DNA of 64,000 nt, taken from IMG/VR virus record IMGVR_UViG_3300033143_006101, positions 186,001 through 250,000 of that record, one strand, 5' to 3'. How positions within the stretch are numbered: the first letter of the stretch is position 1; every line of letters begins with the position of its first letter. The notes beneath the pieces were generated by a model. It did not search any database and had not been told where the DNA came from. It saw nothing but the letters and a program-made list of their open reading frames with translations. Below are positions 30,601 through 63,827 of the stretch, piece by piece. The position numbers and the translations under genes were made by a program.

Positions 30601-31981
30601 TAATGAAGCTAAGTTAAGAGAAGCCCAACTAGATATTGAGACCACAAAACAATTGCATCCTGTTGATGAAAAAGTATGGTTTGATAATCTAGAGTCTCCA
30701 AGCGTACCATCCGAAGTTAAATTATTACTTATTAATCTCAATAATAAACTTAATGCAATAGATAAACGAAATAATGGAGATTATAAAGAGGGACTTATTA
30801 AAGAGACTAATAATATTAAATCTGTATTAATAGATTTGTACAAGCAAGGTAAATTACATTCATATAATATTACAGGATTTTTTCCTATTTATAAACAATA
30901 TTATTCAACTCATGAAGCATTAACAGATTATTCTGATCTTGTATTAGCAGAAGAGTTTGAACAATGGATCCATAAGATAATTGCTATTGATGTAGAAAAG
31001 CAAGAAACATTCAAGCATTTACGAAATGTTGGGAATGCCTGTTTTTGTTATGGGCAAGTTAAAGGTTACCAAGAGCAAGGTGTTAATACATTAAAAATAG
31101 GGAATTTATTAGTAAACGAAGGACTTAGATATTCATCAAATGAATTATTAGATAAGGGATGGAATTTAAGTTCATTATTGTCTCCCAAGAATGAAATTGT
31201 TATTTTATATCCTTGTATAGAAGGACATGATGATGATATGTTTAATAATAATCTAGATCCTCAAGTACAGAGGTATAGGGACGCAGTAATTTCAGGAATA
31301 GCAATAAAAGATTGTCCTATTGAATATATGCCTTATATTAACAGAATTTTTAATAAACTTGGTAAACATATAAATAAAAAATATGATACTATTGTTTTTG
31401 TTAAAGATGTTATAGATTTAAAAAAATGGGAAGAAAGAAAGGCAAAAGACATTGAAAATGAGGCTTCCTCCGCAGATGAAAAAACAAAGAATTTAATGGT
31501 AATAAATTCTTTAGGATATGAAAAATTACAAAAGAGAGGTACAGTCCCTACATTTACTGACGGAAGAACACTTTATATATCTAATTGGATTGGGGTAGAG
31601 GAATTCCCATTAACAAGTAAGTTACTTAGGCTATTAGATATTACAGATGAGATTGGAGATAAAGCCATTAGAAAAGCATTTAAAAAGAAGAGTTTAGATT
31701 TAACACAAGATGATATTCAAACTTATCGAGTATTTAATTATATTGTTCCTATTTCTGATGATCCACAAAATCCGAGAGGATTTAAAATAAGTAAAGAATA
31801 TATGGATACTACGGATCTTGATTTTAGATTAAAACAAGGAAAGATGTGGGATTTAAATGGAAAATGTATGGGAGCTGATGACACTGATGAATTAAAACTT
31901 TTTAATGATAATTTAAGGATATGGATTGATTATCCACATCTATTAAATGTAGATTTAGCAAAATCTTTTGAAGTACTATAA
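27686..31981 (+). CDS. portal protein with intein and long C-terminal extension
   Basis: position before protease/scaffold/MCP; VTHIARRSNPYDIRGTSIINRIF and KIFKLG...WIP segments typical of large-phage portals. Confidence 0.75.
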   Translation: MARRFSTGGPENFNDILPRTIFAEADPERLDKTGASFTGYPGLGNSVNQMVTYGAGNNILRNPSRRFYDPEITTTAIYLPRTVKQKNRWCRWFYDHDELVGAVLDLHAELPYSRAEIVEKDTYVRKLVEECFSRINFFSMLPIIDLEFMKIGEVFIHTPWDDTEGMWSHIIVHNPDFAEVRFTPFADQECTIELIPDDELRSIVHSTKPEDQQLKRRIPDDVFRRVLTGKNITLDPSEVTHIARRSNPYDIRGTSIINRIFRLLMYEDKLREAQITIADNFIYPLKIFKLGDPKIGWIPNETHQRALAQMLQQSTFDPNFSLIYHYGLNVEFHTVADKVMRLEKEWSDITEKKMIALGVGKQFLSGETTYACFVEGSKILTPNDIVNIEDISNDDKILDKNGMVQTVVDNWCEGIPETITKINLWGGKELLCTNNHKWPVWMWPRKCACGCDRDLTAGRAFAHAMKYSSNYKLKKVDCGRATINSKESLGIPIDYESINKISASEIKEWDYLMIPRNFEIIETDTTKDEARLLGYFVTKGSFSKHARTKNLTGINLTFGITEENTLVKDTVDLCEKFGIPVRDVEEKTNSLRIRSIDRKEFKDKVLWFKEHAGEYSHLKKLSSTVMHWPLDLKEELVKGLFKGDGCQQINKVNNEHSVHYTTTSKVLAYQIELILAQLGFPINWTIQDNSHRNRKMTYRLDIYGKFAFDLAKLIWEDDCIINFNDSKQFYGQKAWVDNDYIYIMVKSVEEIKNDKKVYNLTVENSHSYLIENIGTYNSANVALQTQLARYKAKRDLFQIKWIHKMLRIMAERNEWYRRDKKELVGQYRVKRKGKELQERLIIPKLTWHKKLMMRDDQAFLTFMNNVYAQGKGPISTITLLQYMGLSLEDELENKVKQTELEEKIGALIHPITQIAGGMTAKIKDKFKFGKNKPEKEITGEELMKLETTSPTSTQYSGSQMEHPKGDLKKLTVNEAKLREAQLDIETTKQLHPVDEKVWFDNLESPSVPSEVKLLLINLNNKLNAIDKRNNGDYKEGLIKETNNIKSVLIDLYKQGKLHSYNITGFFPIYKQYYSTHEALTDYSDLVLAEEFEQWIHKIIAIDVEKQETFKHLRNVGNACFCYGQVKGYQEQGVNTLKIGNLLVNEGLRYSSNELLDKGWNLSSLLSPKNEIVILYPCIEGHDDDMFNNNLDPQVQRYRDAVISGIAIKDCPIEYMPYINRIFNKLGKHINKKYDTIVFVKDVIDLKKWEERKAKDIENEASSADEKTKNLMVINSLGYEKLQKRGTVPTFTDGRTLYISNWIGVEEFPLTSKLLRLLDITDEIGDKAIRKAFKKKSLDLTQDDIQTYRVFNYIVPISDDPQNPRGFKISKEYMDTTDLDFRLKQGKMWDLNGKCMGADDTDELKLFNDNLRIWIDYPHLLNVDLAKSFEVL
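28799..30016 (+). mobile_element. intein (406 aa) in portal, with LAGLIDADG-type domain
   Basis: TTYA|CFVEGS start, CTNNHKW block B, VYNLTV..SHSY block F, GTYN|S end; LLGYFVTKGS and LVKGLFKGDG. Confidence 0.9.
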
Positions 31982-51229: not shown

Positions 51230-51316
51230 GGTGAGTTGGCAGAGCCCGGTTTATTGCACTGGTTTGCTAAATCAGAGGGTGTAACAGCCCCGAAGGTTCA
51301 AATCCTTCACTCACCG
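51230..51316 (+). tRNA. tRNA-Ser(GCU)
   Basis: GGTGAGT/ACTCACC acceptor, CTGGT-TTGCTAA-ATCAG, long variable arm, G73, no CCA. Confidence 0.93.
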
Positions 51317-51583
51317 AATTACTGCTAAAACAATAAAAGAAATGAAATTGTATGATATTATAGCAAAGATAATGCAAAGATAACGATTATTACTGATAAA
51401 CCAGTAATAATTCTCGAATCGCGAATAGCGAATGGAGGGCTTTATGATAGCATATCAATGTATACGTAAAAGTTGTGGTAAAATAATATCATCTCATGAG
51501 GTCTTAAGAATAAGAAGACCTGATAAAATAACTAAGAAATGTCCTCATTGTAAAGGGCAAGTTAGTAAAATACATGTGAAATA

Positions 51584-51670
51584 GGAGCGGTGGCAGAGTC
51601 TGGCTAATTGCGTCAGTCTTGAAAACTGAAGGGTGTAACAGCCCCGTGGGTTCAAATCCTACCCGCTCCG
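51584..51670 (+). tRNA. tRNA-Ser(UGA)
   Basis: GGAGCGG/CCGCTCC, TCAGT-CTTGAAA-ACTGA, same GGGTGTAACAGCCC arm as Ser(GCU), G73. Confidence 0.93.
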
Positions 51671-51682
51671 AAGGAGAATGAA

Positions 51683-51981
51683 ATGGGGGCAAACGAAAAA
51701 AACCTTGGATCCATCAAGTAGGTCGAGTTGTTGCAAATAATGCAACAGTTGTTTCCGGGGAACAAACTTTTCGATTGGTAGACACGTTAGGAATACCATT
51801 AGAAATCATCCTGGAAAGGTTCGAGCAAGAAAATATTGTAGTCCAGTGGCAAAAGTTTTATGACATGGGACTAAAAGTAGGATGGAACGAACAGACCGTA
51901 ATTGATCGAATGAAGTATGCTATTATTGATATTTATGGTATCCATTATTGGGAAGAAGTAAATAAAAGATTAAGGAGGTAA
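51683..51981 (+). pseudogene. small protein resembling an AlaRS helical segment, frameshifted near its start
   Basis: AAGGAG 6 nt before ATG 51683, which stops at TAG 51719; the -1 frame reads KKPWIHQVG...VSGEQTFRLVDTLGIPLEIILE. Confidence 0.5.
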
Positions 51982-52019
51982 TACCATGTTATAGTTAAAT
52001 CCAAGTAAGGAGAAAGATT

Positions 52020-52223
52020 ATGGCACATGGTTACAGGGCTTCCCGGATGTCTAATCATTGTGGGTATGACTATTGGAGTGCTAGAAAGCACAATAGAAAT
52101 ACCCTAAACAAAGCCAGGTGGTTAAGCCCAACAAGGCATAAATATTCTAAAAAGCTTACGTATCGAGAAGAACGAAAGATGAATAAACAAATTATTCAGG
52201 AGGACTTACATGAACTGTATTAA
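52020..52223 (+). CDS. small basic hypothetical protein
   Basis: RBS GGAG; GYDYWSAR. Confidence 0.55.
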   Translation: MAHGYRASRMSNHCGYDYWSARKHNRNTLNKARWLSPTRHKYSKKLTYREERKMNKQIIQEDLHELY

Positions 52224-52263
52224 GGAGGTTGGAGTTTTCTGACTTTAATGTTAGGAGGCTCTT

Positions 52264-52554
52264 ATGTTTTACTCTTGGAATAGCTGGACAGGAGAATACG
52301 ACGAACACGATTGTCCTGTTTGGTGGATGTTGAATGATCATATTGGATATTATAGAATCCAACGAACGCAACAAGAAATGACTCGTTGGTACAGAGATTT
52401 AGAAGAACCAGTAAAGCTAAGACAACGGAGAAGTCCAAAAAACTTGAATCCGTGGATCATTGAGACGATCCCTAGTAGATGTTGTTCTAAATCCTGGAAA
52501 GACCTGTATAAAATTCGCAGGCAATGGCAGGCCCCGAAAACTATAGTACGGTGA
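52264..52554 (+). CDS. small basic hypothetical phage protein
   Basis: RBS GGAGG; RTQQE...RRSPKNL...KSWK...RRQW. Confidence 0.6.
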   Translation: MFYSWNSWTGEYDEHDCPVWWMLNDHIGYYRIQRTQQEMTRWYRDLEEPVKLRQRRSPKNLNPWIIETIPSRCCSKSWKDLYKIRRQWQAPKTIVR

Positions 52555-52631
52555 AACCTGTAAGATATTTGACAACTCCGGTCTCATTTTTGTTCAGAAT
52601 GTAACCTCAAGGTTACAAACTGAACACTTTT

Positions 52632-52715
52632 GGTGCAGTTGAGCAGTGTGGTGTGCTTAGCAGGCTGTAAACCTGTGCTCATTTGAGATTAGTGGTTCGA
52701 TTCCACTCTGCACCA
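52632..52715 (+). tRNA. tRNA-Tyr(GUA), bacterial type
   Basis: GGTGCAG/CTGCACC, GCAGG-CTGTAAA-CCTGT, long variable arm, G1-C72, A73. Confidence 0.9.
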
Positions 52716-52794
52716 ATTTTAAAATCTATTTGAATCTTAAAAGTGATTGATAAATTACTACTCTTTAAATAAGAGTTACATAGGAGGTTCGAAT

Positions 52795-53054
52795 ATGAAA
52801 TGTGAAAATTGCAACAACGAGCACGATGGTTCTTATGGTTCTGGTAGATTCTGCTCTGAAAAATGTGCTAGAGGATTTTCTACGACGGTAATTCAAAGAA
52901 TAACAAAGAAGAGAACCTGGAACTAATTTGTCCTAATTGTCATTCCTTGACTGTAAATTATGGTTCTTTAAACATGGGTAATGGTAGAAAATATTATAGG
53001 GATTTAAAAAGAAAACAAGCAGGTGTAGCTCAGATTGGGAGAGCACAAGACTGA
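52795..53054 (+). pseudogene. internally deleted HNH endonuclease
   Basis: N-terminal MKCENC..HDGSYGSGRFCS (stop 52926) joined out of frame at ~52884 to DGNSKNN..ENLELICPNCHS..YG..N.GNGR, which runs into tRNA-Phe. Confidence 0.7.
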
Positions 53055-53092
53055 AAATCTTGGTGTCGTCGGTCCGATTCCGACCATCTGCA
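53019..53092 (+). tRNA. tRNA-Phe(GAA)
   Basis: GCAGGTG/CATCTGC, CAAGA-CTGAAAA-TCTTG; T-loop TCCGATT. Confidence 0.9.
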
Positions 53093-53234
53093 TATAATAG
53101 GACAAAAATCGGGGCATTTTGTCCCGATTTTTGTCCCGATTCAAATAAAATGTAATTTTTTGCAAAAAAAAGTGTAAAATTATGTCTAGTTATACTTTAT
53201 ATAAGTAGGGCATAAAAAGTAAAGGTTATAATAT

Positions 53235-53651
53235 ATGTCGTATAAAAATAAGCAAAGGCAATTAGAATACCAACGAAACTGGATGAGGAAAAGAAGAAAT
53301 ATGTTTTTTTCAGGTAAAGTTTGTGCGAAATGTGGGTCTTCAAAAAAATTGGTATTACATCATATAAATCCAGAAGAAAAAGAAAGTCATTATGTTTGGT
53401 CGTGGTCAGAAAAACGAAGAGAAGCAGAGCTTAAAAAATGTGTTGTTTGGTGCGAAAAGTGTCATATTGAATATCATACAAATAAACGGAGATTAAAAAA
53501 TATACATGGTACACGTACTGGATATAATAAGTATAAATGTCGTTGCGATGCTTGTATACAAGCTAATAGCCTATATCAAAAACAATGGCGTAATCAAAAA
53601 CAATTAGCTGGCGTTGTGTCCGAACTGGTTAGGTCATCGATTGCAACTTGA
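53235..53651 (+). CDS. HNH endonuclease, C-terminus overlaps tRNA-Cys
   Basis: CAKCGS..LVLHHINP...CVVWCEKCHIEYH; HGTRTGY..CRCDAC. Confidence 0.85.
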   Translation: MSYKNKQRQLEYQRNWMRKRRNMFFSGKVCAKCGSSKKLVLHHINPEEKESHYVWSWSEKRREAELKKCVVWCEKCHIEYHTNKRRLKNIHGTRTGYNKYKCRCDACIQANSLYQKQWRNQKQLAGVVSELVRSSIAT

Positions 53652-53681
53652 TATATGCAGGTTCGAATCCTGTCAACGCCT
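53610..53681 (+). tRNA. tRNA-Cys(GCA)
   Basis: GGCGTTG/CAACGCC, ATCGA-TTGCAAC-TTGAT, U73. Confidence 0.9.
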
Positions 53682-53687
53682 AATAAA

Positions 53688-53760
53688 ACTCCCAGAGTTC
53701 GACTGGCTGAACGCCTGTGTTACAAGCAGGTATGTCTTGGTTCAAATCCAAGTGGGAGTA
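53688..53760 (+). tRNA. tRNA-Val(UAC), atypical (G8, G32)
   Basis: ACTCCCA/TGGGAGT, GTTC/GAAC D-stem, CCTGT-GTTACAA-GCAGG, CTTGG-TTCAAAT-CCAAG. Confidence 0.8.
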
Positions 53761-53774
53761 ATAAGGAGAATAAT

Positions 53775-54362
53775 ATGTTTGAATTACAAGATTATTTAAA
53801 AAAATACGAAGATTTTAATGTAATAGATACAGATGCTTATTGTATTACAAAATCTAATATGAAAGATCAATTAAGTCATTGGGGTGCAGAAGAGATTGCT
53901 GAAAGATCATTTATTAATGCTCTTTGGATTACTTGTTCAGAATCCGGAAAGATAATATCATCAGATAATTTTGCAGAAACTGGACTAAAACATTTATTAG
54001 AAGCTGTACAATACGAAGTAGAAAAGAAGAGGAGACTTGTAGATGCTTTTCTTTTTAATAGAGCAATGTTAGGTAACATGAAACATTATGTAAATGCTAT
54101 TGATTTTGATCCTATAACGGACAAGGATAAATTAGTAACGGAGGGTATTTTTGGTAGTTTGTGGGGAGTAAATATAACAATAATTACTACAATACCTCAT
54201 AAAACTATTTTTTCAATAGAAGCTAAAAATACTTTAGGCTATTATCGAGTAGAAGGAGATATATTAGAAATAGGAATTAATCCAGATGCAGTAGCAGTAG
54301 CAACTAAGAAAAAGTATATAAGGTCTAAGTTAGAACCTTTACCTTTAAACCTTGAAGAATAA
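53775..54362 (+). CDS. truncated major capsid protein paralog (195 aa)
   Basis: LEAVQYEVEKKRRLVDAFLFNRAMLGNMKHYVNAIDFDPIT...TEGIFGSLWGVNI aligns by eye with MCP LETLQYEVERHRLLVDKFIMNRAELGDLKKNINAIDYDPIT...TGIFGSIWGVNI; ATG 53775 behind AAGGAG. Confidence 0.8.
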   Translation: MFELQDYLKKYEDFNVIDTDAYCITKSNMKDQLSHWGAEEIAERSFINALWITCSESGKIISSDNFAETGLKHLLEAVQYEVEKKRRLVDAFLFNRAMLGNMKHYVNAIDFDPITDKDKLVTEGIFGSLWGVNITIITTIPHKTIFSIEAKNTLGYYRVEGDILEIGINPDAVAVATKKKYIRSKLEPLPLNLEE

Positions 54363-54363
54363 T

Positions 54364-54436
54364 GGGAGCGTAGCTCAATTGGGAGAGCGTCTGCCTTGCA
54401 CGCAGAAGGTCGCGAGTTCGACTCTCGCCGCCTCCA
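54364..54436 (+). tRNA. tRNA-Ala(UGC)
   Basis: TCTGC-CTTGCAC-GCAGA, G3:U70 wobble, A73. Confidence 0.92.
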
Positions 54437-54716
54437 ATGGATCCATTAAGTTAGATCCCCCTTCTCTACACCAAGAATGCTAAAATATGAGGGGCTATGA
54501 GTAGAGAACGGGTATTAATAGCCCCTCATAAATAAGATGATATGAAGTAATCCACTATCAGGAGGTATACCATGTCATCTTGTAACAAATTATTAACCAC
54601 TGCATTATGGATGATTGCAGGGTGTCTCATAGCGATACTTTTAACCTTGTTCACTTTTATGAACAAGATGGATTTAATACTTCAAACATTAAAAAGTATG
54701 GCTGTTCTTTAAAGAC

Positions 54717-54855
54717 GGGGGAGTGCAGGCCAATGGTTGGCCATCTGATTTTGGGTCAGACAAAGCACTGCATTAAAGCTGTATCAACTTGAACCTTTTA
54801 GGTTCCATAAGAAACCAGCGTACAAGCATATCGGTTCGATTCCGACTCTCCCCCA
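54717..54855 (+). ncRNA. tRNA-like RNA 1 (UUG loop) with 70-nt variable-region insertion
   Basis: GGGGGAG/CTCCCCC, GGCC/GGCC D-stem, TCTGA-TTTTGGG-TCAGA, TCGG-TTCGATT-CCGA; insert 54761-54830. Confidence 0.85.
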
Positions 54856-54857
54856 CA

Positions 54858-55073
54858 TGGCTCAACTGGTATAGCCAATCAGTTAAACGCAGAGATAACA
54901 GGCTCCTTTGAAAAAAACATGAGAGTCTCTGACAAAGGAAAGTTGATCACTAAACCTTGATACAAATCGCATGCGTGTATCTGCCTTCCAGGAAAGACTG
55001 GTTTACCCTATGCTTTCATCGGCATCGCCTTCATCGGCGTGATAGGGGTTGACAGCTCGGAAAGACGGGCAAC
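54858..55073 (+). ncRNA. candidate ~215-nt structured RNA
   Basis: ORF-free, GC-richer; hairpins CCAG-GAAAGA-CTGG, GCTCG-GAAAGA-CGGGC, ACCCTAT/ATAGGGG, CGCC/GGCG, GATAC/GTATC. Confidence 0.55.
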
Positions 55074-55075
55074 AC

Positions 55076-55218
55076 GGCGAAGTAGCCAAGTTGGGTAAAG
55101 GCACTAGAATTGAAATCTAGCTAACAGCAGACTAACTAAATTAACTTGAACTCAGAAGAGTTCCCCATAACTTAGTTTACAAGCAAAATTATCGATGGTT
55201 CGAGTCCATCCTTCGCCA
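55076..55218 (+). ncRNA. tRNA-like RNA 2 (UGA loop, A73) with 73-nt variable-region insertion
   Basis: GGCGAAG/CTTCGCC, CTAGA-ATTGAAA-TCTAG, GATGG-TTCGAGT-CCATC; insert 55121-55193. Confidence 0.85.
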
Positions 55219-55220
55219 AT

Positions 55221-55357
55221 GCCCGAGAAGCTCATGGAGAGCACTTTTTCTACTAAAAAAGAGGTAACAATTCTTTTGGGTTATTTCAACTTGAACTCTT
55301 TAGAGTTCCATCGGAACTAACTTACAAGCATTTGCCGTTCGATTCGGCACTCGGGCT
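55221..55357 (+). ncRNA. tRNA-like RNA 3 (irregular anticodon loop) with 71-nt variable-region insertion
   Basis: GCCCGAG/CTCGGGC, GCTC/GAGC, CTTTT-TCTACTAA-AAAAG, TGCCG-TTCGATT-CGGCA; insert 55262-55332. Confidence 0.85.
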
Positions 55358-55377
55358 CATAAAATTTTAGAGGGTTT

Positions 55378-55761
55378 ATGCCATACAAGGATAAGGAGAA
55401 GCAATCAGAGTATCAGTTGCAATGGATGAAAGCTAGAAGAAATGCTTTCTTTAATGGCAAGTGTTGTAAAAAATGTGGGTCTATGTTTAACTTAGTCTTA
55501 CACCATAAAAACCCAGCCGAGAAAGAAGATCATAGGATATGGTCGTGGTCGGAAGAAAGAAGAAATGCAGAACTTAAAAAATGTGTTGTTTGGTGTTTAT
55601 CATGTCACATAGAACATCATGCTGATAGACTGAGATTAAAAGAAATACACGGCACAAGAACTGGTTATAAGAATTATGGGTGTCGATGTAAAAAATGCAC
55701 ACAAGCAAATACGGTTTACATAAGAAATTGGAATAGAAGAAAAAAAGGGGTATTCGTCTAG
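55378..55761 (+). CDS. HNH endonuclease, paralog of 53235-53651, C-terminus overlaps tRNA-Glu
   Basis: LVLHH.NP, WSWSE.RR.AELKKCVVWC..CH, HGTRTGY...CRC shared with 53235. Confidence 0.85.
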   Translation: MPYKDKEKQSEYQLQWMKARRNAFFNGKCCKKCGSMFNLVLHHKNPAEKEDHRIWSWSEERRNAELKKCVVWCLSCHIEHHADRLRLKEIHGTRTGYKNYGCRCKKCTQANTVYIRNWNRRKKGVFV

Positions 55762-55819
55762 TGGACTAGGACATCGGGTTTTCAATCCGACAACAGGAGT
55801 TCAATTCTCCTATACCCTA
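55747..55819 (+). tRNA. tRNA-Glu(UUC)
   Basis: GGGGTAT/ATACCCT, TCGGG-TTTTCAA-TCCGA. Confidence 0.92.
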
Positions 55820-55832
55820 ATAAGGAGACAAT

Positions 55833-56489
55833 ATGAAACCAAGTGATGCAGGCATAGCAAACTCATTACATTTTACGAGTAAAGATTATCCTGAAGAGGT
55901 GAAGAAGAATTTTCTTACTATCACCTAGGATGGGAAAAGAGGCAGACCAAAGTTTCCTGAAAGGACTTGTTCACGATGTGAAAAGATTACTGAGAGGAAA
56001 AACAAATCCGGGATGTGTCAAAAATGTTTAAAACTTACTAACAAAGAAAGAAGAGAGGAAGAAAAAGCAGCTGAGCCTAAGTATAACTGTAAAGAATGCA
56101 CTGCACCGATTACCAGGCATAGTAAATCAGGATTGTGTCAGACATGTTTTAGTTTAACTCGTACCAAGATGCCAACAGAGGAAGTACTCGAAGAAGATGT
56201 TAAAAAATTAAGCGTAATAGCAATGAGTAAAAAGTATGGGGTATCTGATGCAACCATAAACAAATGGATGAGGCTTTATGGAATAAAAAGAGTACTTTCT
56301 TGGCGTAGGACATTGCCATCCGAAGAACAGCTTAAAAAAGATTTAGTGGATCTGCGGTATGACGATATAGCAAAGAAGTATAACGCAACAAAAAACCAAA
56401 TTAACAAATGGATAAAGCATTACAATCTACAAGGCTATAAAAAGATTTTAAGAATAGAGGGAAAGAAAAACGAAAACAATAAAGGGTGA
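55833..56489 (+). CDS. zinc-finger plus HTH-repeat protein, interrupted by an in-frame TAG at 55926
   Basis: AAGGAG-ATG 55833 is in frame with the tracked 56013 ORF; CSRC/CQKC/CKEC/CQTC; two HTH-like repeats. Confidence 0.55.
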
Positions 56490-56931
56490 TTTAATCAAGT
56501 TAGCATTGGAAGGGCACTTCGATGTTATTATTCATGGATGTAATTGTTATCGTACCATGGGTAAAGGTATTGCAAGTACTATTAAACGAGTTTTTCCTGA
56601 AGCATACACAGCCGATAGAGAAACACGTGCCGGAGCCAGCAAGCTTGGTACTTTTTCTCATGCTACAGTCGTAAGACCAAAGGGAAGAATAACTATTGTA
56701 AATGCATACACACAAGACAGATTTAATCCTAAATACAGTAAAGGAAAAAGCATGGCTGATTACCGGGCAATAACTGATGTAATGAAAAGCATCAAAGTGG
56801 CATTTCACGGATTTAGAATTGGTTATCCTAAAATAGGAGCAGGGCTTGCTCGTGGTGATTGGAATAAAATATCTGAAATTATTGATAGAGAGTTGGAAGG
56901 AGAAGATCACACGTTGGTAGTATTACCATAA
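56470..56931 (+). CDS. macrodomain (ADP-ribose-processing) protein with apparent ACG start
   Basis: KTIKGDLIKLA, IIHGCNCYRTMGKGIA, VNAYTQ, YPKIGAGLARGDW. Confidence 0.8.
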   Translation, partial: TKTIKGDLIKLALEGHFDVIIHGCNCYRTMGKGIASTIKRVFPEAYTADRETRAGASKLGTFSHATVVRPKGRITIVNAYTQDRFNPKYSKGKSMADYRAITDVMKSIKVAFHGFRIGYPKIGAGLARGDWNKISEIIDRELEGEDHTLVVLP

Positions 56932-56936
56932 AATAC

Positions 56937-57011
56937 AGAGGCATAGCATAGTTTGGTCAAATGCAGCGGGTTTTGATCCCGTGATCTCAAGTTCAAATCT
57001 TGATGCCTCTA
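56937..57011 (+). tRNA. tRNA-Gln(UUG), conventional
   Basis: AGAGGCA/TGCCTCT, GCGGG-TTTTGAT-CCCGT. Confidence 0.9.
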
Positions 57012-57630
57012 ATAAAGGAGATAGATGTGGGTGAAGAGCATAAAGATTGTGATTGTGGTGGTGATGAAGATGATTGTGTTTGTGACAATGATGATGATAT
57101 AATTATACTAGATGATGAAGAAGACATAGAGAAAATAAGCACTCCAAGTATAAATAATTTGTTAGAAACAATAATTAAAGAATTACAGACTATGAATACT
57201 AAAATAGAAAAGATTAATAATAAATTAAAAGCATTAAGTGATAGGGTAGACGAAATTTATATGGATGGTTTTTGATATGGGAAATTAAGATGAAACCAAA
57301 TGATGTATTAAAATGGGATCCACATTGGGTTAAATATAGTGACCCCAATAAAGATAGATTAGTCAGTTTAAAAGTAACACATCTTCGGACAGAGACTTCT
57401 GTAGAAGTACGAAATTATGCATCAGGTTTAGATTATACTGTCACAATGGATTTTTTAAAAGATCGATTACATGTACTGACCGATTACACAGATGGAAAAA
57501 GAATGTAAGTGTGGAGCCATGATGCTCCATATAACATTTGCTAACAAAGCAAAGTTAGCAGTATATCATTGCAAGAAGTGTGGAAGAACAGTCACAGAAC
57601 CATTAAATGAAACTATAAAGAGGATATAAT

Positions 57631-58740
57631 ATGAAAGCACCACCAAAGAAAAAAACAACAGGTAAAGGTAAAACAGCAAGTAAAAATGCCCCTAAGAGAA
57701 AACCAGTAGAAAGAGAAGAAATTTCAAAGGTTGAAGAGATATTCTCAGAGGACAATGCTCGTATAAGATTCGGGGTAGAATGTGTACCAGCGATTAAGGT
57801 ACGAATGCAATCAGATCCAAATTCTTTTGCCCATTTGTTTCATAGTTATATATTAGAGCAAGGGCAGATAGGATGCCATAACTTACACCCACCAAGAAAA
57901 ATTCTTTACCTGGAAGATAAACAAGAAGGTCCTGAGAGTTTAGGTACTCGAGTAGATATTAGTAATAAAACTTCAAGGGTTTTTCCCAGTGAATATGTTA
58001 TAGCCATAACTGTGGATATACCCCTATCAGAAATAGCGATTCGTACCAAGATAGACATACTCCATAAAGAGCTTGTTGATACAGCTTCTTCAAAATTAAA
58101 CAGGAATATAGCTACGAATTGGCTCAAGCTTCTTTATGCCTCTGCACTGGTTAATAAAAATATTAAAACTCTAAGAAGCTTCTGGAGGAACATCCCAGTT
58201 ATTCGTTGGAAAGTTCTTTTTAGTTTAATCACTAAAGCGAGAAGTAAAATTCATCAAAGGGGGTACCAGACATTGGTATTTTTAGTTCACCCGGCAACAC
58301 TTGCGGAATTGGAACTATTTCTTGGAGGCCATCTAAGAGTAACTTCAACCAGTTTTCCATATGTTAAACAATCAATATATGTTCCGGAAGGGTTTGTGCT
58401 TATATTTCCCAATGATAGGACTATGGCTGCAAAGAATATACGAATAGATTTGACTGCGTTTGGGGCTAATAAGTTTGTTATGGGATCAGCTACCTTTGGG
58501 TTTATGTTTGTACAGTCTGAGTCCTCTGTTATTCTTGATCCCGAATCCGTAGTTTGTATTAGAATGAGTAATTTTAAAATTCCTGGTTATCTAAAAGAAA
58601 TTAAGTCTTATCTGATGCCTACGGTTTTTTCTAAGCTAAAAGAGAAAAGCATAAAGCTGTGGGGAAAAGTTAAGAAGTTAAAGAATAAGATAATGAATAG
58701 GATAAAGAAGTTTAGGAAGAAAAATGCTGGAATCGCATAG
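57631..58740 (+). CDS. divergent near-full-length major capsid protein paralog with basic termini
   Basis: RIRFGVECVPAI vs MCP RLRFGAEMIPLI; RVFPSEY vs RIFPPEF; IRIDLT...FGFMFV...DPESV vs IRVDLT...YGWLFV...NPRSV. Confidence 0.8.
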   Translation: MKAPPKKKTTGKGKTASKNAPKRKPVEREEISKVEEIFSEDNARIRFGVECVPAIKVRMQSDPNSFAHLFHSYILEQGQIGCHNLHPPRKILYLEDKQEGPESLGTRVDISNKTSRVFPSEYVIAITVDIPLSEIAIRTKIDILHKELVDTASSKLNRNIATNWLKLLYASALVNKNIKTLRSFWRNIPVIRWKVLFSLITKARSKIHQRGYQTLVFLVHPATLAELELFLGGHLRVTSTSFPYVKQSIYVPEGFVLIFPNDRTMAAKNIRIDLTAFGANKFVMGSATFGFMFVQSESSVILDPESVVCIRMSNFKIPGYLKEIKSYLMPTVFSKLKEKSIKLWGKVKKLKNKIMNRIKKFRKKNAGIA

Positions 58741-58809
58741 AGGTCGAGTGCACCTGCCTTGTAAGCAGGAGGGTAAACCCCCGCGTCAGTTCAAATCTGA
58801 CTTCCAGCT
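58726..58809 (+). tRNA. tRNA-Thr(UGU) with long variable arm
   Basis: GCTGGAA/TTCCAGC, CCTGC-CTTGTAA-GCAGG, 15-nt variable region with GGG-TAAA-CCC, U73. Confidence 0.85.
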
Positions 58810-58811
58810 CA

Positions 58812-59260
58812 TAAAGCAAAATGCAGATACTGCTTTAGGAAGTTAGAGATACTTCTAAAAAACTCCGTACATACTACGATAGTGTATGGGTGCTCTTTCT
58901 GCTGAGATCCTTATGGGAGTAGAATCACTAGGAGGCGAGACTGGTGAAAAACTAAAAACCGCCAGAAGACTAAAAATGCTGCATCGTTTTTAGTCTGAGG
59001 TGCTTGATGGCGAAAGTTAGACGCTGAGTAAGGGCGGAAACGTCAAGAAAGCCGAGGTTGTGATATTAGCAACGAGCATATGGGTATCAAATCCCATTCA
59101 AGCACATCTCTGTTCGGATCGTTGGTCACTGTTTGGGTAGAATCCTTCTGAGATACCGTAATTCGATCTTTATGCCCAACATTGTGCATGCAGAGTAATC
59201 CTCGGACCGAATGTACCCCTTAAGGAAGGAGCTAAGGTTTGGGGTATTTAATTGAAGGTA
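58812..59260 (+). ncRNA. candidate large structured RNA A with embedded tRNA-like module
   Basis: ~450 nt without a long ORF; AAAGCA/TGCTTT, AGACTAAAAA/TTTTTAGTCT, GTGCTTGA/TCAAGCAC, ATGGG/CCCAT, TACCCC/GGGGTA. Confidence 0.6.
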
Positions 59261-59267
59261 TAATTAA

Positions 59268-59728
59268 ATGATAAAAAGATGGAAAGATAACGATATACTT
59301 ATTATGAAAAGTATGATTAATGAAAAGACAAGCCCAGAAATTGCAGAGATATTTGAAACTTCTACTAAAGCAATTAATAGTTTATTCACAAGAAGAAAAA
59401 TTATTCGAAATAAAGAAATATCAAAAGAGCATGTTAGAAAAAGTTTGATAAAAAGAAATAAAAAAAATTATGGGGATAAAAATGGTAACTGGAAAGGAGG
59501 AATATCAAAAAATAATTATCATTACAAAAAATTACAAATTGAAAAATTTCCAGAGAGAGAGTAAAGGCACGAGGTAAAGTGCATAAAGCAATTAAAAGCG
59601 GAAAGTTAAAAAGAAAACCATGTGAAATTTGTAATTCAAAAGATGTGCAGGCACATCATAATGATTATTCTAAACCACTAGAGGTTAAATGGTTTTGTAG
59701 AAAACATCATAGAGAGTATGAACAATAG
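59268..59728 (+). pseudogene. HNH endonuclease split by an (AG)5 repeat, abutting tRNA-Asp
   Basis: NGNWKGG then TAA at 59562; removing one AG gives RVKARGKV...PCEICNSKDVQAHHNDYSKPLEVKWFCRKHH, ending at TAG 59726-59728. Confidence 0.75.
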
Positions 59729-59799
59729 GAGCTTTAGTTTACTTGGGAAAACACTACCCTGTCACGGTAGAGTAAGGAGATCGAAACTCCTAAGCTCCG
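59728..59799 (+). tRNA. tRNA-Asp(GUC)
   Basis: GGAGCTT/AAGCTCC, CTACC-CTGTCAC-GGTAG, G73; T-loop ATCGAAA. Confidence 0.9.
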
Positions 59800-59802
59800 A
59801 AT

Positions 59803-60198
59803 TGTCAGGTAGGTTGCCTCACGAGAGGCTCGGCATTTGATAGTACCAATCCCGTAATTAGTAGGGCTATCAAATACTGCTCGGTACTGGTTAGGGTCTG
59901 AGTCAGTTTGGTTTCTAGAAAAGCTAGATTATTATAGTTTCATCAGGTTATTAGGACCGCTTCGTGAAGCAACTTGGATGAACAACTTCTAGCTGATCAT
60001 TCTGAAGAACTTGGCGGTTAGGGGAAACAGATGTGATAAGGATGAAGATTGAAACTAGGATCCAATTGTAAACTTATCTTACTTAAAAATAGTAGAAGGG
60101 ATTGAGGCGACTCCCACTCGGTTTATAATATTAAATAAACTCTAACTATTCTGAGTAAAAGCCTTCACCCTAGATTAGCGACCTGGGGCTATCTGACA
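59803..60198 (+). ncRNA. candidate large structured RNA B closed by a terminal helix
   Basis: TGTCAGGTAG (59803-59812) pairs with CTATCTGACA (60189-60198); AGGTTGC/GCGACCT, GCCTC-ACGA-GAGGC, TTTGATAG/CTATCAAA. Confidence 0.6.
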
Positions 60199-60229
60199 CA
60201 ACTATGGATCCATAGTTATTTGGGGTATA

Positions 60230-60703
60230 ATGATTAACGTATTTATGACAATACATCAGAAACAGCAATCTCTTATTAGTCCAGAGGCTACTGATACTAT
60301 TACTTCAATTTGTATTACAGCAATTATTATTTGTATTATATTATTTATATCTGTACTTTTTATGTTATATAGAAATAAATGGATATTTGGTAATGCTCTT
60401 ATTCTTTCAAGAATGGTGTTTGCAAGACAACTTAATACTCTAATGTTTCAAGAAGCAGAAATTTATACTAGTGAAGAATTGTATGCTAATAATTGGTCAT
60501 ATAATAAAATGCTTTTTTCAATTTGGGTATGGACACCACTAAAAATGGCTTATAATAAGAAAATGTTGGATTATGTTGTAATGGGTGTGTTACCTGATAT
60601 TAGGGAAAGAATTATAGATGTTTCTATTGAAGAAGTCTGGAAGAAAAACCCAAAACCATGGGAAGCATTAAAAAAAAGAACTTATGGCTTTCTGTGCAAT
60701 TGA
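60230..60703 (+). CDS. membrane protein
   Basis: TM segment ICITAIIICIILFISVLFML. Confidence 0.55.
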   Translation: MINVFMTIHQKQQSLISPEATDTITSICITAIIICIILFISVLFMLYRNKWIFGNALILSRMVFARQLNTLMFQEAEIYTSEELYANNWSYNKMLFSIWVWTPLKMAYNKKMLDYVVMGVLPDIRERIIDVSIEEVWKKNPKPWEALKKRTYGFLCN

Positions 60704-60706
60704 AGG

Positions 60707-61159
60707 GTGTGTACAATGATTATAACAAATATTGCGATAGCTCTTATAACTATTTTAGTACTTATTGATGTTATATTATTAACCGCTAATATTATGGATA
60801 AAGATAATAATCTAAGTATACTAAGCTGTATTGGTGGAATATTTATAATTGTACTTATTACATGGTTTATGATAGTAGCACCTACATTTAAGGATAGTGA
60901 TAAAGAACTAAAGAGGTTAGAAATGTCATTAATAAAAGAACCAAAAGAAATGACTCTACATTCTTTGAATAAGGAACTAGAAAAATATTATGATGAGCAC
61001 GGTCGTGAATATGGAGAAGAAAGTAAGATATTCTACAAATGTGAATTAGAATTATTTGATAGAATAAGAGAAGCAATTAAAGATGATAGAGAAACTCTAG
61101 TACTATTTGAGTTTACTAGAAAATTTGCTGAGATGAAATCAGCTTGTGCGGGGAATTAG
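60707..61159 (+). CDS. two-TM membrane protein
   Basis: two N-terminal hydrophobic helices. Confidence 0.55.
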   Translation: MCTMIITNIAIALITILVLIDVILLTANIMDKDNNLSILSCIGGIFIIVLITWFMIVAPTFKDSDKELKRLEMSLIKEPKEMTLHSLNKELEKYYDEHGREYGEESKIFYKCELELFDRIREAIKDDRETLVLFEFTRKFAEMKSACAGN

Positions 61160-61161
61160 AT

Positions 61162-62346
61162 ATGAAAGAATTAATAAATAGACAAATCGATGGTAAAATA
61201 AGTAACGATAATGTAGAAGAATGTAATTCCAGTTATAAGGCAACTATCCTAAAGGGAGCACCCAAAGGACTTGCTGTTTTTGAACAATATGGTAATTTAG
61301 TTCTTAAGCAAATAACACATGATGTTGTTACACAACATACTTTAGATAAAAAATTATTTTTGACTTTTGTGCTACATCTTCCTCTTAGAAATGAAAATTT
61401 AGACGCTTTATTTTTAGAGAAATTTTCTGAGCTAGGAGATGTTTATAGAATGGAAGATGGTTTAATGAGTTATAAAAGTATCGTAGTAGCAAAGGATTTT
61501 ATAATTCGATACGAAAGTGGGGAAAGTACTGTTAAAATAGCTCATATTTATCTTGCTCTGCATGTACAAACACTACAACAAAGAGATATTCTTATTTTAA
61601 AATTAAAGGAATTATTTAAAGATCATATTGTTACTGATATAAATGTAAACGTATCATTTTTTTATCTTACTAAACATGGATTAAAAAATTTAGGTTTTGA
61701 TATGATATATACACCCGAGCTACCCGAAGTAAATTATCCTTACATTTCAATTGATAAAAATGTTAAGGATATGAATGAATATATAGAAAAATATATTAAA
61801 AGTGAATCTCCTATAATTATTCTAATGGGAGAACCTGGAACAGGTAAAACAAGGTTTATTAGATATCTTCTATCAAAGTTAAAATGTCATTATAATGCAG
61901 ATTGGAATGTATATTTCACAGTGGATCCGGAAGTGCTAAAAGACACGGTGTTCTTTGTGAATTTTATGGCTTCTACGTCAAGAGCAATGGTAGTAGAAGA
62001 CATGGATAAAAATCTTCACGCGAGAATAGAAGGCAATGAGGTAATGTATAGTTTACTTGGAATATCTGATGGCATCATAAATATAGAAGAAAAGAAAATG
62101 ATCTTTTCTACTAATCTACCTTCTATAAAAAATATAGACTCGGCTATTATCAGAGAAGGTAGATGCTATGATATTCTAAATTTTAGAGCATTAACTGTAA
62201 ATGAATCAAATGCATTTTTAGCATATAATAAAAAAGGGGATTTAGATTTAGTAAAAGATTCATATACTCTTGCTGAACTATATGCACTAATAAACGGTAA
62301 CCCTAATAATTCTCATATAAGAAAAACAGGATTCAAAAATGAATGA
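61162..62346 (+). CDS. AAA+ ATPase
   Basis: GEPGTGKT, VVEDMD, STN, SAIIREGRCYD. Confidence 0.85.
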   Translation: MKELINRQIDGKISNDNVEECNSSYKATILKGAPKGLAVFEQYGNLVLKQITHDVVTQHTLDKKLFLTFVLHLPLRNENLDALFLEKFSELGDVYRMEDGLMSYKSIVVAKDFIIRYESGESTVKIAHIYLALHVQTLQQRDILILKLKELFKDHIVTDINVNVSFFYLTKHGLKNLGFDMIYTPELPEVNYPYISIDKNVKDMNEYIEKYIKSESPIIILMGEPGTGKTRFIRYLLSKLKCHYNADWNVYFTVDPEVLKDTVFFVNFMASTSRAMVVEDMDKNLHARIEGNEVMYSLLGISDGIINIEEKKMIFSTNLPSIKNIDSAIIREGRCYDILNFRALTVNESNAFLAYNKKGDLDLVKDSYTLAELYALINGNPNNSHIRKTGFKNE

Positions 62347-62718
62347 GAATAAACACTGGCAAGTTATGGTAATGCGAAGAAGGTGGTATCATGCTTTATA
62401 CTATTGGTTAAGAAGACTTCGTGGGAGAGATTTTAGTAAAGCTAAAGAGTATTTTGTAGGATTTCATATGAAGATTACAGATGATGGTATAATGGATGAA
62501 CCTACTTGTTCTCATATAGTTGAGACTTTTGAAAGTACACAAGGTTATACGCCTGCTTATGAAACTTTATCAGAAAGAAATAAGGATGTTAAATATGAAT
62601 GATTGGTTGTTAACTATTATAATGCTTATATTAATAGTTATGTGTATTATATTATTAGGTATAGGTGAATTACTTCAAATGATTTTAGTGGTATTGAAAT
62701 GAAAAGGAGATAATTAAA

Positions 62719-63111
62719 ATGTTAGATGATTTATTACCTCCTATAGGAGGATGTCCAATATCAGTTACTTTATGCAAAGATTGCCGTTATTTGTCTAGTG
62801 GAGGTTCTGAGCCAAGTGTAAACAGTGAAGAGTATAAAGAAGTAAAAAAGAAGTATCCGCATGTACAAAATATGCTGACAAAATATAGAGAGTGTAGTAG
62901 TTTTAATGTAATTTTCAGAATTTTTAATTCTATGGTAAAAAGGTTTTTTGGGGATAAAATACAAACGGTTCTTAATGAAGATGACTATTGGGATTTAAGA
63001 CTTCTACTCAGTTATGCACATTTTGTAAGAACAGGAGAAAAGAGAAAGGATATTGAAGGTCCTGAAAATGAAAATGATCTTGATGAATGTATAGAATGGA
63101 AAAGATTATAA
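62719..63111 (+). CDS. hypothetical protein
   Basis: RBS AAAGGAG; ends 1 nt before tRNA-Asn. Confidence 0.5.
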   Translation: MLDDLLPPIGGCPISVTLCKDCRYLSSGGSEPSVNSEEYKEVKKKYPHVQNMLTKYRECSSFNVIFRIFNSMVKRFFGDKIQTVLNEDDYWDLRLLLSYAHFVRTGEKRKDIEGPENENDLDECIEWKRL

Positions 63112-63183
63112 TGCTGGGTAGCTCAGAGGGAGAGCTCGTGTTTGTTAAACACAGGGTCGGCGGTTCAATCCCGTCCCCAGCAG
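63112..63183 (+). tRNA. tRNA-Asn(GUU)
   Basis: TGCTGGG/CCCAGCA, loop TTGTTAA, G73. Confidence 0.9.
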
Positions 63184-63369
63184 ATAAAAATAGATTTTGG
63201 AGATGTTAGTTATGGCAGAAAAAGTAAAAATAATTGTACTTAAGTCTAGGAATAAACGATTGAGAGGCATGAGGAAATTCATTACTGAACATATTGATGA
63301 ATTGGATTGTTTATTCACTGAAAAAGAACAGGACAAATTGAATAAGATTAAGGCAAGGAGAAGTTCTGT

Positions 63370-63726
63370 ATGCTAGTAAAATTATTAAACTGGCTCATTA
63401 AACGTCTTAAGTTAACAGGAAAGATTTCAGATGGGTATCATACTTTTGATGAATTGTATGAACATAGAGTAAGATTGTATTTAGCTCTTTGTAAACATGG
63501 CCCCAAGTTTGTCTGGAAGTCACGGAAACATTCAGATGGAACTTCATACCCTGGATGGTTTTTGTTAGGAATGAATACCGTTCCCGGATTGCAAATGACG
63601 TATCATATTCCGGATAAGTATTGGGATCACTGCCAATAGTATCGAGAGTTAGATCAAGCTCCTAATTTTGATGGACATACATCGAATGATGTACTAACAA
63701 GAATCCACAGAGAGTTGATTATTTAA
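63370..63726 (+). CDS. conserved-type phage protein interrupted by an in-frame TAG at 63637
   Basis: SDGYHTFDELYEHR...KHSDG...GWF..G...TYH; after TAG continues YRELDQAPNFDGHTSNDVLTRI to TAA 63724. Confidence 0.6.
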
Positions 63727-63752
63727 GTTGTAATAGGCATCATATTAAAAAA

Positions 63753-63827
63753 CGGGGTGTAGGCTAGTCAGGCTAAGTCGCCTGCTTTGGGAGCAGGAAA
63801 TCGGAAGTTCGAATCTTCTCACCCCGA
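63753..63827 (+). tRNA. tRNA-Pro(UGG)
   Basis: CGGGGTG/CACCCCG, CCTGC-TTTGGGA-GCAGG, A73. Confidence 0.93.

What the first reader, a model, noticed from the sequence alone, without database searches (positions are those of the whole stretch)
59803..60198. Large candidate ncRNA B, ~396 nt, closed by a 10-bp terminal helix
Starts 3 nt after tRNA-Asp, has no ORF, and its ends pair. The order terminal helix, GGTTGC/GCGACC helix, small hairpin, and a TAGAT before the closing strand loosely echoes RNase P P1-P2-P3, but the GAGGAAAGUCC/GGCUUA P4 core is absent. A and B total about 850 nt, so they might be one GOLLD-sized RNA interrupted by the HNH-tRNA-Asp cassette.
Basis: partly seen in the sequence, partly recalled or inferred. 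Interest (0 to 1): 0.65.

Follow-up and report, generated by a model that had tools for sequence, protein, structure and literature searches.

The report
Orphan non-coding spacer after phage tRNA-Asp
A 396-base gene-free stretch after a tRNA gene in a giant phage is real and probably made as RNA, but nothing links it to RNase P or GOLLD, and only one 50-base hairpin in it is conserved elsewhere.

Summary
Window 59803-60198 has no ORF, even if any one stop codon is reassigned. It starts 3 nt after tRNA-Asp, and its ends form a 10-bp helix with pairing probability about 1.0. Its G+C is 0.41, against 0.27-0.28 in the flanking genes.

The interpretation does not hold. No Rfam family matches at E<=10. 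A and B do not fold together better than A with a shuffled B. Two related phage contigs, L005 and L051, have tRNA-Thr and tRNA-Asp as neighbours without the HNH gene, so tRNA-Asp is not part of an inserted cassette.

The structure signal is weak. The fold z-score is -1.9, the reverse strand scores -2.35, and the central 250 nt score about 0.

In both relatives, tRNA-Asp is also followed by a 240-440 nt ORF-free, G+C-rich stretch closed by a long-range helix. None of these stretches aligns with B. The only conserved piece of B is a ~50-nt hairpin (60028-60084). It is 86% identical to the start of another tRNA-adjacent non-coding RNA in a third contig, L021.

Best reading: B is a lineage-specific trailer or spacer RNA co-transcribed with the tRNA array, carrying one functional hairpin. 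The rest is uncertain.

The parts
59728..59799 (+). tRNA-Asp (anticodon GTC). Processing of its 3' end would create the 5' end of B.
   Evidence: ARAGORN; Rfam tRNA, 56.2 bits.
59803..60198 (+). B: a 396-nt ORF-free segment with G+C 0.407 (0.49 in the first 100 nt).
   Evidence: no ORF; G+C; 95th percentile of 396-nt windows in the coding part of the window; no Rfam match at E<=10.
59803..59812 (+). 5' strand of the terminal helix (TGTCAGGTAG).
   Evidence: Pairs with 60189-60198; pair probabilities 0.54-1.0; anchored helix found in 1 of 300 shuffles.
60189..60198 (+). 3' strand of the terminal helix (CTATCTGACA).
59816..59829 (+). 5-bp hairpin GCCTC-ACGA-GAGGC.
   Evidence: Mean pair probability 0.97.
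59835..59875 (+). Long hairpin: ATTTGATAG pairs with CTATCAAAT (9 bp), with a 23-nt top.
   Evidence: Mean pair probability 0.97.
60028..60084 (+). The one conserved module, a two-step hairpin. The outer stem is GATAAG/CTTATC (60035-60040 / 60073-60078). The inner stem is GATTG/CAATT. The internal loops are purine-rich and conserved.
   Evidence: blastn against L021:2314-2362 gives 85.7% identity over 49 nt, E 5e-9. In alignment A4, one outer-stem pair changes A-U to G-C. Covariance model R1 scores 82 bits in both and finds no other copy.
60168..60188 (+). 6-bp hairpin CCCTAG-(9 nt)-CTGGGG, directly abutting the 3' strand of the terminal helix.
   Evidence: Mean pair probability 0.99.
60102..60129 (+). 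Sigma-70-like hexamers TTGAGG-16-TATAAT. This is a consensus match only.
   Evidence: The region has 23 such matches against 22.4 expected in shuffles, so this is not evidence of a promoter.
60200..60217 (+). Perfect 18-nt palindrome AACTATGGATCCATAGTT followed by ATTT. It may be a weak terminator or processing hairpin between B and the next ORF.
   Evidence: Read from the sequence. The terminator scan did not call it.
60230..60703 (+). Downstream ORF of 157 aa, a predicted membrane protein. Homologues in L005 and L021 are preceded by a DUF7873 gene instead of B.
   Evidence: no DUF7873 remnant in B.
58811..58997 (+). 5' part of candidate A: a conserved structured spacer between tRNA-Thr and tRNA-Asp. 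It is not part of B.
   Evidence: Alignment with L005:2540-2740. Stems covary, and two conserved loops, ATGCAG and CTGCAT, are complementary.
59268..59728 (+). HNH endonuclease gene split by a frameshift. The two frames overlap at 59543-59564. Together with the 3' part of A (58998-59267) it is extra relative to L005.
   Evidence: PHROG matches: E 1.5e-6 for the N-terminal piece and 1.6e-14 for the HNH piece. Translations. An independent assembly, L047, has the same sequence.

Best explanation
B is a lineage-specific, non-coding trailer or spacer of the phage's tRNA array.

Inferred mechanism:
- It is transcribed on the + strand together with tRNA-Asp.
- Its 5' end is freed when the host 3'-processing enzymes trim tRNA-Asp.
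- It then folds into a bundle of hairpins closed by the 10-bp terminal helix.
- The palindromic hairpin at 60200-60217 lies between it and the next ORF.

Most of its sequence is under little or no constraint. One ~50-nt hairpin (60028-60084) is a conserved, transferable module, probably a binding or processing site. B is not RNase P, GOLLD, ROOL, tmRNA, a tRNA or an intron, and it is not half of a split RNA with A.

Shown: no ORF, the composition, the terminal helix, conservation of the hairpin, the lack of family matches, and the lack of alignable orthologues.
Inferred: transcription, processing and any function.
For: - B is ORF-free under every single stop-codon reassignment.
- All stretches of 250 nt or more without an ORF of at least 70 aa, bar one of 272 nt, lie in the tRNA region of an otherwise densely coded window.
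- G+C is 0.41 against 0.27-0.28 in the flanking genes.
- The terminal helix has probability about 1.0 and is anchored at both ends of the gap.
- Relatives that share the Thr-Asp gene pair (L051 also shares much of the wider tRNA order) have an ORF-free, long-range-closed stretch right after tRNA-Asp. In L005:2814-3255 the fold z is -5.3. In L051:11354-11592 G+C is 0.47 and a strong terminator follows.
- The 50-nt hairpin is the only significant non-coding match between the window's tRNA region and L021. There it opens a 231-nt RNA (fold z -4.7) that ends at tRNA-Gly.
[quoted passage not shown] GOLLD and ROOL often lie near tRNAs in phages, possibly co-transcribed (PMC5737381).
Against: - There is no transcript evidence.
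- The fold z is only -1.9, and the reverse strand scores better.
- The centre of B is no more structured than shuffles.
- B aligns with neither L005 nor L051 after tRNA-Asp. At the same evolutionary distance, the first 190 nt of A still align.
- The conserved hairpin rests on two sequences and one compensatory pair.
- The hairpin after B has only three U's, so it may not terminate transcription. B could then simply be a long 5' leader.
Confidence: 0.45

Rival explanations
1. The whole 396 nt is one discrete, stable, functional large RNA of a new family. It would be released from the tRNA precursor and act in trans, in the manner proposed for GOLLD, ROOL or T4 RNAC/RNAD.
For: - An anchored terminal helix with a hairpin stacked on its 3' strand.
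- Raised G+C.
- Positional analogues after tRNA-Asp in L005 and L051.
- A densely coded phage genome would be expected to delete useless DNA.
Against: - Weak and strand-symmetric folding signal.
- No alignable orthologue in L005 or L051.
- No homologue in GenBank phages, IMG/VR, or the metagenome and genome collections.
- Only 50 of 396 nt are conserved anywhere.
Confidence: 0.2
2. B is mainly a cis-acting region for the downstream membrane-protein operon: a promoter plus a long 5' leader. The conserved hairpin would be an operator or attenuator, and the terminal helix would be incidental.
For: - TTGAGG-16-TATAAT at 60102-60129.
- A G-rich ribosome-binding site and ATG follow directly.
- TTTGGGGTAT occurs exactly twice in 64 kb, each time just upstream of an ORF start.
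- In L021 a TATAAT follows the hairpin.
Against: - Promoter-like matches are at chance frequency (23 against 22.4).
- Homologues of the downstream gene in L005, L021 and L022 have no B-like leader.
- In L021 the hairpin precedes a tRNA, not this gene.
Confidence: 0.17
3. B is evolutionary debris with no function. It would be what recombination and homing-endonuclease traffic left in a tRNA array, for example decayed tRNA-like elements of the kind that fill the same position in L005.
For: - At least four HNH-type genes populate the array.
- The segment order differs between the window and L005.
- L005 has tRNA-like pieces with canonical T arms at the equivalent place.
- B has no detectable orthologue.
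Against: - Debris of local coding DNA should have about 0.28-0.33 G+C, not 0.41-0.49.
- No tRNA-like remnant is detectable in B, even with relaxed ARAGORN and Rfam at E<=10.
- The hairpin is 86% conserved between phages whose neighbouring proteins share 29% identity.
Confidence: 0.13
4. B is a diverged RNase P-like ribozyme, or the 3' half of a GOLLD-sized RNA split by an HNH-tRNA-Asp insertion.
For: Only the order of helices seen by eye, and the combined length of A and B (about 850 nt).
Against: - No Rfam hit at E<=10.
- The proposed P2 helix has probability 0.
- tRNA-Asp is ancestral next to tRNA-Thr.
- A and B gain less energy when joined than A with shuffled B.
Confidence: 0.02

Closest known systems
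[quoted passage not shown]
   Same: Non-coding RNA genes embedded among phage tRNA genes on the same strand, with a homing-endonuclease gene in the same cluster (segB in T4, PMC2330249; HNH genes here).
   Different: From my own knowledge, the T4 RNAs are much shorter than B. Their transcripts are documented, whereas B has no transcript evidence. No sequence comparison with the T4 RNAs was run, but no blastn match to any GenBank phage record was found at E<=10.
GOLLD and ROOL large RNAs (PMC5737381; bioRxiv 10.1101/2024.12.08.627333)
   Same: Large non-coding RNAs often found next to tRNAs in phages and prophages, possibly co-transcribed with them.
   Different: No Rfam model matches at E<=10. 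B is shorter: ROOL averages 581 nt (PMC5737381). B shows no multi-junction, covariation-supported architecture, and no family of homologues is known.
Bacterial RNase P RNA
   Same: A terminal helix joins the 5' and 3' ends, and the size is in a similar range.
   Different: No covariance-model match. The proposed P2 helix is not favoured.
The 231-nt non-coding RNA upstream of tRNA-Gly in related contig L021 (undescribed)
   Same: It shares the ~50-nt two-step hairpin at 86% identity, is tRNA-adjacent and ORF-free, and has no Rfam match.
   Different: Outside the hairpin the two do not align. In L021 the hairpin is at the 5' end and the RNA precedes a tRNA. In B it is in the 3' half and the RNA follows a tRNA. 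The L021 RNA folds far better (z -4.7 against -1.9).

Membership tests
RNase P RNA | Match to an RNase P covariance model (conserved P4 core and P1-P4 architecture). | tested here: not met
   No Rfam family reaches E<=10 on 58600-60400 or on B alone.
RNase P RNA | P1-P2-P3 helix order at the 5' and 3' ends. | tested here: not met
   P1 is present. The proposed P2 (GGTTGC/GCGACC) has pair probability 0.0 and competes with hairpins of p 0.97 and 0.99.
RNase P RNA | Pre-tRNA 5' leader cleavage. | not testable with these tools
   Needs an in vitro assay.
GOLLD / ROOL | Match to the family covariance model. From my own knowledge, both families are in Rfam. | tested here: not met
   nothing at E<=10.
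GOLLD / ROOL | Location near tRNAs in a phage or prophage. | tested here: met
   B lies 3 nt after tRNA-Asp in a 252,876-bp phage contig. Context alone does not define membership.
GOLLD-sized RNA formed by A plus B | The two halves pair with each other, and relatives lack the interrupting cassette. | tested here: not met
   Energy gain is -4.9 against -12.0 +/- 3.4 for shuffled B. Relatives L005 and L051 keep tRNA-Asp and lack only HNH and the 3' part of A.
tRNA / tRNA-like / tmRNA | Cloverleaf with a T arm, detectable by ARAGORN or the Rfam tRNA and tmRNA models. | tested here: not met
   ARAGORN with default settings, and with introns allowed and a 90% threshold, finds nothing in B. Rfam finds nothing.
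Group I / group II intron | Match to an intron core model, and interruption of a host gene. | tested here: not met
   No Rfam match. B lies between a complete tRNA and a complete ORF.
HNH-associated guide RNA (HEARO / IscB omega RNA) | Match to the model next to a large IscB-type HNH protein. | tested here: not met
   No Rfam match. The HNH gene here is a small, frameshifted homing-type gene.
Non-coding RNAs of phage tRNA clusters (T4 RNAC/RNAD type) | Encoded within a tRNA gene cluster on the tRNA strand. | tested here: met
Non-coding RNAs of phage tRNA clusters (T4 RNAC/RNAD type) | A stable transcript processed from the tRNA precursor. | not testable with these tools
   No expression data are available here.

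The most novel reading that the evidence does not exclude
In this clade of jumbo phages, the slot just after tRNA-Asp always holds a 240-440 nt RNA closed by a long-range helix. The RNA would evolve too fast to align: B here, a tRNA-like composite in L005, and a terminator-ended RNA in L051. B would then be one member of a new class of fast-evolving, tRNA-precursor-derived phage RNAs, built from exchangeable hairpin modules such as the one shared with L021.
Probability: 0.15. Interest if true: 0.6.

Novelty: new member of a known kind. Interest (0 to 1): 0.3.

Why it matters
If B is a real processed RNA, it adds to the short and poorly understood list of non-coding RNAs that phages carry inside their tRNA clusters (T4 RNAC/RNAD, GOLLD, ROOL). 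It would also suggest that such RNAs can be assembled from movable hairpin modules in arrays that homing endonucleases keep reshuffling. As it stands, the practical value is negative. This locus should not be annotated as RNase P-like or GOLLD-like. The better-supported RNA elements nearby deserve attention first: the first 190 nt of A, the 50-nt hairpin, and the oversized tRNA-like genes.

Tried and rejected
- **Rfam.** Searches at gathering threshold and at E<=10 on the window, the tRNA region, A plus B, and B alone found only tRNAs.
- **Recoded protein gene.** Rejected: every frame has mixed stop codons.
- **Paralogues of A or B in the window.** None.
- **GenBank phages.** blastn found only the HNH domain. 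A and B gave chance hits only at E<=10.
- **IMG/VR.** Scans with two flanking proteins, a tRNA-Asp pattern, an A-start pattern and the hairpin pattern returned only the source contig or chance matches.
- **Metagenome contigs.** The A-based pattern found nothing. The hairpin pattern found 14 chance hits.
- **Genome contigs.** 9 chance hits.
- **Synteny through proteins.** This gave L005, L021, L022, L006, L019 and L020. Through the RtcB gene next to the L021 hairpin it gave L048-L052. No further copy of the hairpin turned up, and there was no B homologue.
- **Strain variants.** L002 and L047 are 100% identical to the window, so they carry no information.
- **B as a decayed DUF7873 gene.** No tblastn signal.
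- **B as a tRNA with a giant intron, or a tmRNA.** No.
- **Local alignment of B to the post-Asp regions of L005 and L051.** At shuffle level.
- **A small ORF inside the conserved hairpin** (TTG start, 18 codons here and 27 in L021). I read this from the sequences and consider it unlikely, because conservation is centred on the hairpin and ends at its 3' foot.
- **The hairpin as a general phage promoter.** Unlikely: there is one copy in the 64-kb window and one in the 10.6 kb held of L021.

Full report
**Context**

The window is bases 186001-250000 of IMGVR_UViG_3300033143_006101, a 252,876-bp phage contig. It is densely coded and carries inteins, a PIF1-like helicase, a ribonucleotide reductase and an SbcC-like ATPase.

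From about 50.9 kb onward lies a tRNA array, with 13 tRNAs by ARAGORN, all on the + strand. Every stretch of 250 nt or more without an ORF of at least 70 aa, bar one, lies in this array.

The local gene order is:
1. a 369-aa ORF
2. tRNA-Thr (58726-58810)
3. candidate A (58811-59267)
4. a frameshifted HNH gene (59268-59728)
5. tRNA-Asp (59728-59799)
6. candidate B (59803-60198)
7. an 18-nt palindrome (60200-60217)
8. a 157-aa membrane-protein ORF (60230-60703)

**The observation**

B has no ORF of 20 aa or more on its own strand. It carries 7-19 stops of mixed kinds in every frame, so recoding of one stop codon cannot rescue a gene.

Its ends, TGTCAGGTAG and CTATCTGACA, form 10 pairs including one G-U, with ensemble probability 0.99-1.0 for nine of them. 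A helix that long, anchored at both ends of the tRNA-to-ATG gap, appeared in 1 of 300 dinucleotide shuffles. A long-range helix of 10 bp or more somewhere in the gap appeared in 54 of 300.

G+C is 0.407 overall and 0.49 in the first 100 nt, against 0.267 and 0.283 in the flanking genes.

Other signals are weak:
- The whole-B fold has z = -1.89, and the reverse strand has z = -2.35.
- 160-nt windows over 59880-60200 score between -1.3 and +0.6.
Its own probability is 0.

**Known families**

No Rfam family reaches E<=10 in A or B. This holds whether the search covers 1.8 kb or B alone, where the filters are laxest. That excludes detectable RNase P, GOLLD, ROOL, tmRNA, tRNA, intron and HNH-associated RNA models. 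ARAGORN finds nothing in B even with introns allowed and a lowered threshold.

**Relatives**

Sequence searches of GenBank phages and IMG/VR found no homologue of B. Nor did pattern scans of the metagenome and genome contig collections with the A-derived and hairpin-derived patterns. Relatives came only through neighbouring proteins.

- **L005** (Logan SRR28147557) has an AAA ATPase 52% identical to the window's. Its order is ATPase, tRNA-Thr, a 200-nt spacer, tRNA-Asp, then about 770 nt without a called gene, then a DUF7873 gene, then the homologue of the 157-aa ORF.
- **L051** (a 191-kb phage, JGI 3300063112) keeps much of the window's tRNA order. Thr and Asp are 1 nt apart, followed by 260 ORF-free nt with G+C 0.47. 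That stretch has a long-range helix and a strong terminator.
- **L021** (JGI 3300033145) has the DUF7873 C-terminus directly before its homologue of the 157-aa gene.

The L005 spacer is homologous to the first ~190 nt of A. It shows conserved blocks and covarying stems. Two conserved loops, ATGCAG and CTGCAT, are complementary in both phages.

That spacer runs straight into tRNA-Asp. Relative to L005, the extra material in the window is the 3' part of A plus the HNH gene, not tRNA-Asp. Joining A to B gains less folding energy (-4.9 kcal/mol) than joining A to shuffled B (-12.0 +/- 3.4). The picture of one RNA interrupted by a cassette is therefore not supported.

**What the relatives say about B itself**

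B aligns with neither the L005 nor the L051 post-Asp region. The alignment scores are at shuffle level. It is not a remnant of the DUF7873 gene that occupies the neighbouring position in L005 and L021.

All three phages nevertheless have an ORF-free, G+C-rich, long-range-closed stretch right after tRNA-Asp. In L005 it folds with z = -5.3, contains three T-arm-like GGGTTCGAATCCC-type motifs and includes a 143-nt tRNA-like gene. This is positional conservation without sequence conservation.

**The one conserved piece**

Window 60028-60084 matches L021:2311-2367 (blastn: 49 nt, 85.7% identity, E 5e-9). It is a two-step hairpin. The outer stem is GATAAG/CTTATC here and GATGAG/CTCATC in L021, which is one compensatory change. 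The inner stem GATTG/CAATT and the purine-rich internal loops are unchanged.

In L021 the hairpin opens a 231-nt ORF-free RNA (z = -4.7, no Rfam match) that ends at tRNA-Gly. Outside the hairpin the two RNAs do not align.

It is the only significant non-coding match between these phages, whose adjacent proteins share 29% identity. A covariance model of it finds no other copy in the window or in any fetched locus. Public scans with its core gave only chance matches.

**Interpretation**

I favour, at 0.45, a co-transcribed trailer or spacer RNA. Its 5' end would be set by tRNA-Asp 3' processing. Its ends are held by the terminal helix, and only the 50-nt hairpin is under clear selection.

The rivals are:
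- a genuine new large trans-acting RNA (0.2)
- a leader or promoter region for the downstream operon (0.17); the sigma-70-like match at 60102-60129 is at chance frequency
- non-functional debris of a recombination-prone array (0.13); composition argues against this
- the RNase P or split-GOLLD reading (0.02)

The closest documented analogues are:
- GOLLD and ROOL, which often lie near tRNAs in phages (PMC5737381)

B shares their context but none of their sequence or structure.

**Limits**

- There are no expression data.
- Only three diverged relatives were found, and two identical strain copies (L002, L047).
- The conserved hairpin rests on two sequences.
- One of my notebook entries gave the window offset as 180000. 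The correct value is 186000.

Noticed in passing
window 58811-58997 (and L005:2540-2740): The first ~190 nt of candidate A is a conserved structured spacer between tRNA-Thr and tRNA-Asp. The first hairpin changes G-C to A-U. The last hairpin has a fully different stem but the same loop. The two conserved loops, ATGCAG and CTGCAT, are complementary, which suggests a kissing or long-range helix. This is better supported as an RNA than B is.
   Followed up: partly
window 58998-59267 and 59268-59728: The 3' part of A plus the HNH gene is extra relative to L005. Bases 58998-59110 fold as a tRNA-shaped multi-branch: an 8-bp closing stem GTGCTTGA/TCAAGCAC, with a T-arm-like hairpin ATGGG-TATCAAA-CCCAT next to its 3' strand. 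No tRNA tool calls it. This may be the leader of a mobile HNH unit.
   Followed up: partly
window 59543-59564: The HNH endonuclease gene is split by a frameshift in a GAGAGAGAG run. The same sequence appears in an independent assembly from another sample (L047). It is either a pseudogene or a programmed frameshift.
   Followed up: partly
window 54717-54856, 55076-55218, 55221-55358: Three tandem oversized tRNA-like genes of 138-143 nt. One scores 53 bits as a tRNA, with a 69-nt insertion in the variable region and a TGA anticodon. All three share a conserved insert: AACTTGAAC, a covarying hairpin, then ACAAGCA. One overlaps a weak Y-RNA-like (YrlA) match at 19.6 bits. L005:3104-3246 holds a similar 143-nt element.
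   Followed up: partly
L005:2814-3255 and 3237-3404: The stretch after tRNA-Asp in the relative folds with z = -5.3 and carries three T-arm-like motifs. It is followed by a 36-codon hydrophobic ORF bracketed by a 26-nt inverted repeat.
   Followed up: partly
L021:1214-1549 and 2307-2537: The related phage contig encodes a tmRNA (Rfam 116 bits; tag ATETPVLKAA) right after tRNA-Asn. It also has a 231-nt unannotated structured RNA (z = -4.7) ending at tRNA-Gly, just upstream of RtcB.
   Followed up: partly
window, whole; e.g. 54437-54446, 60204-60213: GGATCC occurs 34 times against 5.3 expected (6.4-fold), the most over-represented 6-nt palindrome. ATGGATCCAT occurs 7 times against 0.09 expected, mostly inside genes. 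Several other G+C-rich palindromes, such as CGATCG and GACGTC, are absent.
   Followed up: partly
window 55363-55761, 55929-56489, 59268-59728; L003:14458-14877: At least four HNH-type endonuclease genes sit among the tRNA genes. This recalls segB in the T4 tRNA cluster and may explain the mosaic spacers.
   Followed up: no
window 59238-59247 and 60219-60228: TTTGGGGTAT occurs exactly twice in 64 kb: about 20 nt before the HNH start and just before the start of the 157-aa ORF. It may be a shared translation or processing signal, or a junction duplication.
   Followed up: no
window 51230-63827 against L051:2972-12250: The tRNA gene order (Ser, Ser, Tyr, Cys, Val, Ala, Glu, Gln, Thr, Asp, Asn) is largely shared between two phages with almost no nucleotide similarity. 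What lies between the tRNAs differs.
   Followed up: partly
window 11489-14482 and 27686-31981: Both the ribonucleotide reductase and a 1431-aa protein carry inteins with LAGLIDADG domains.
   Followed up: no
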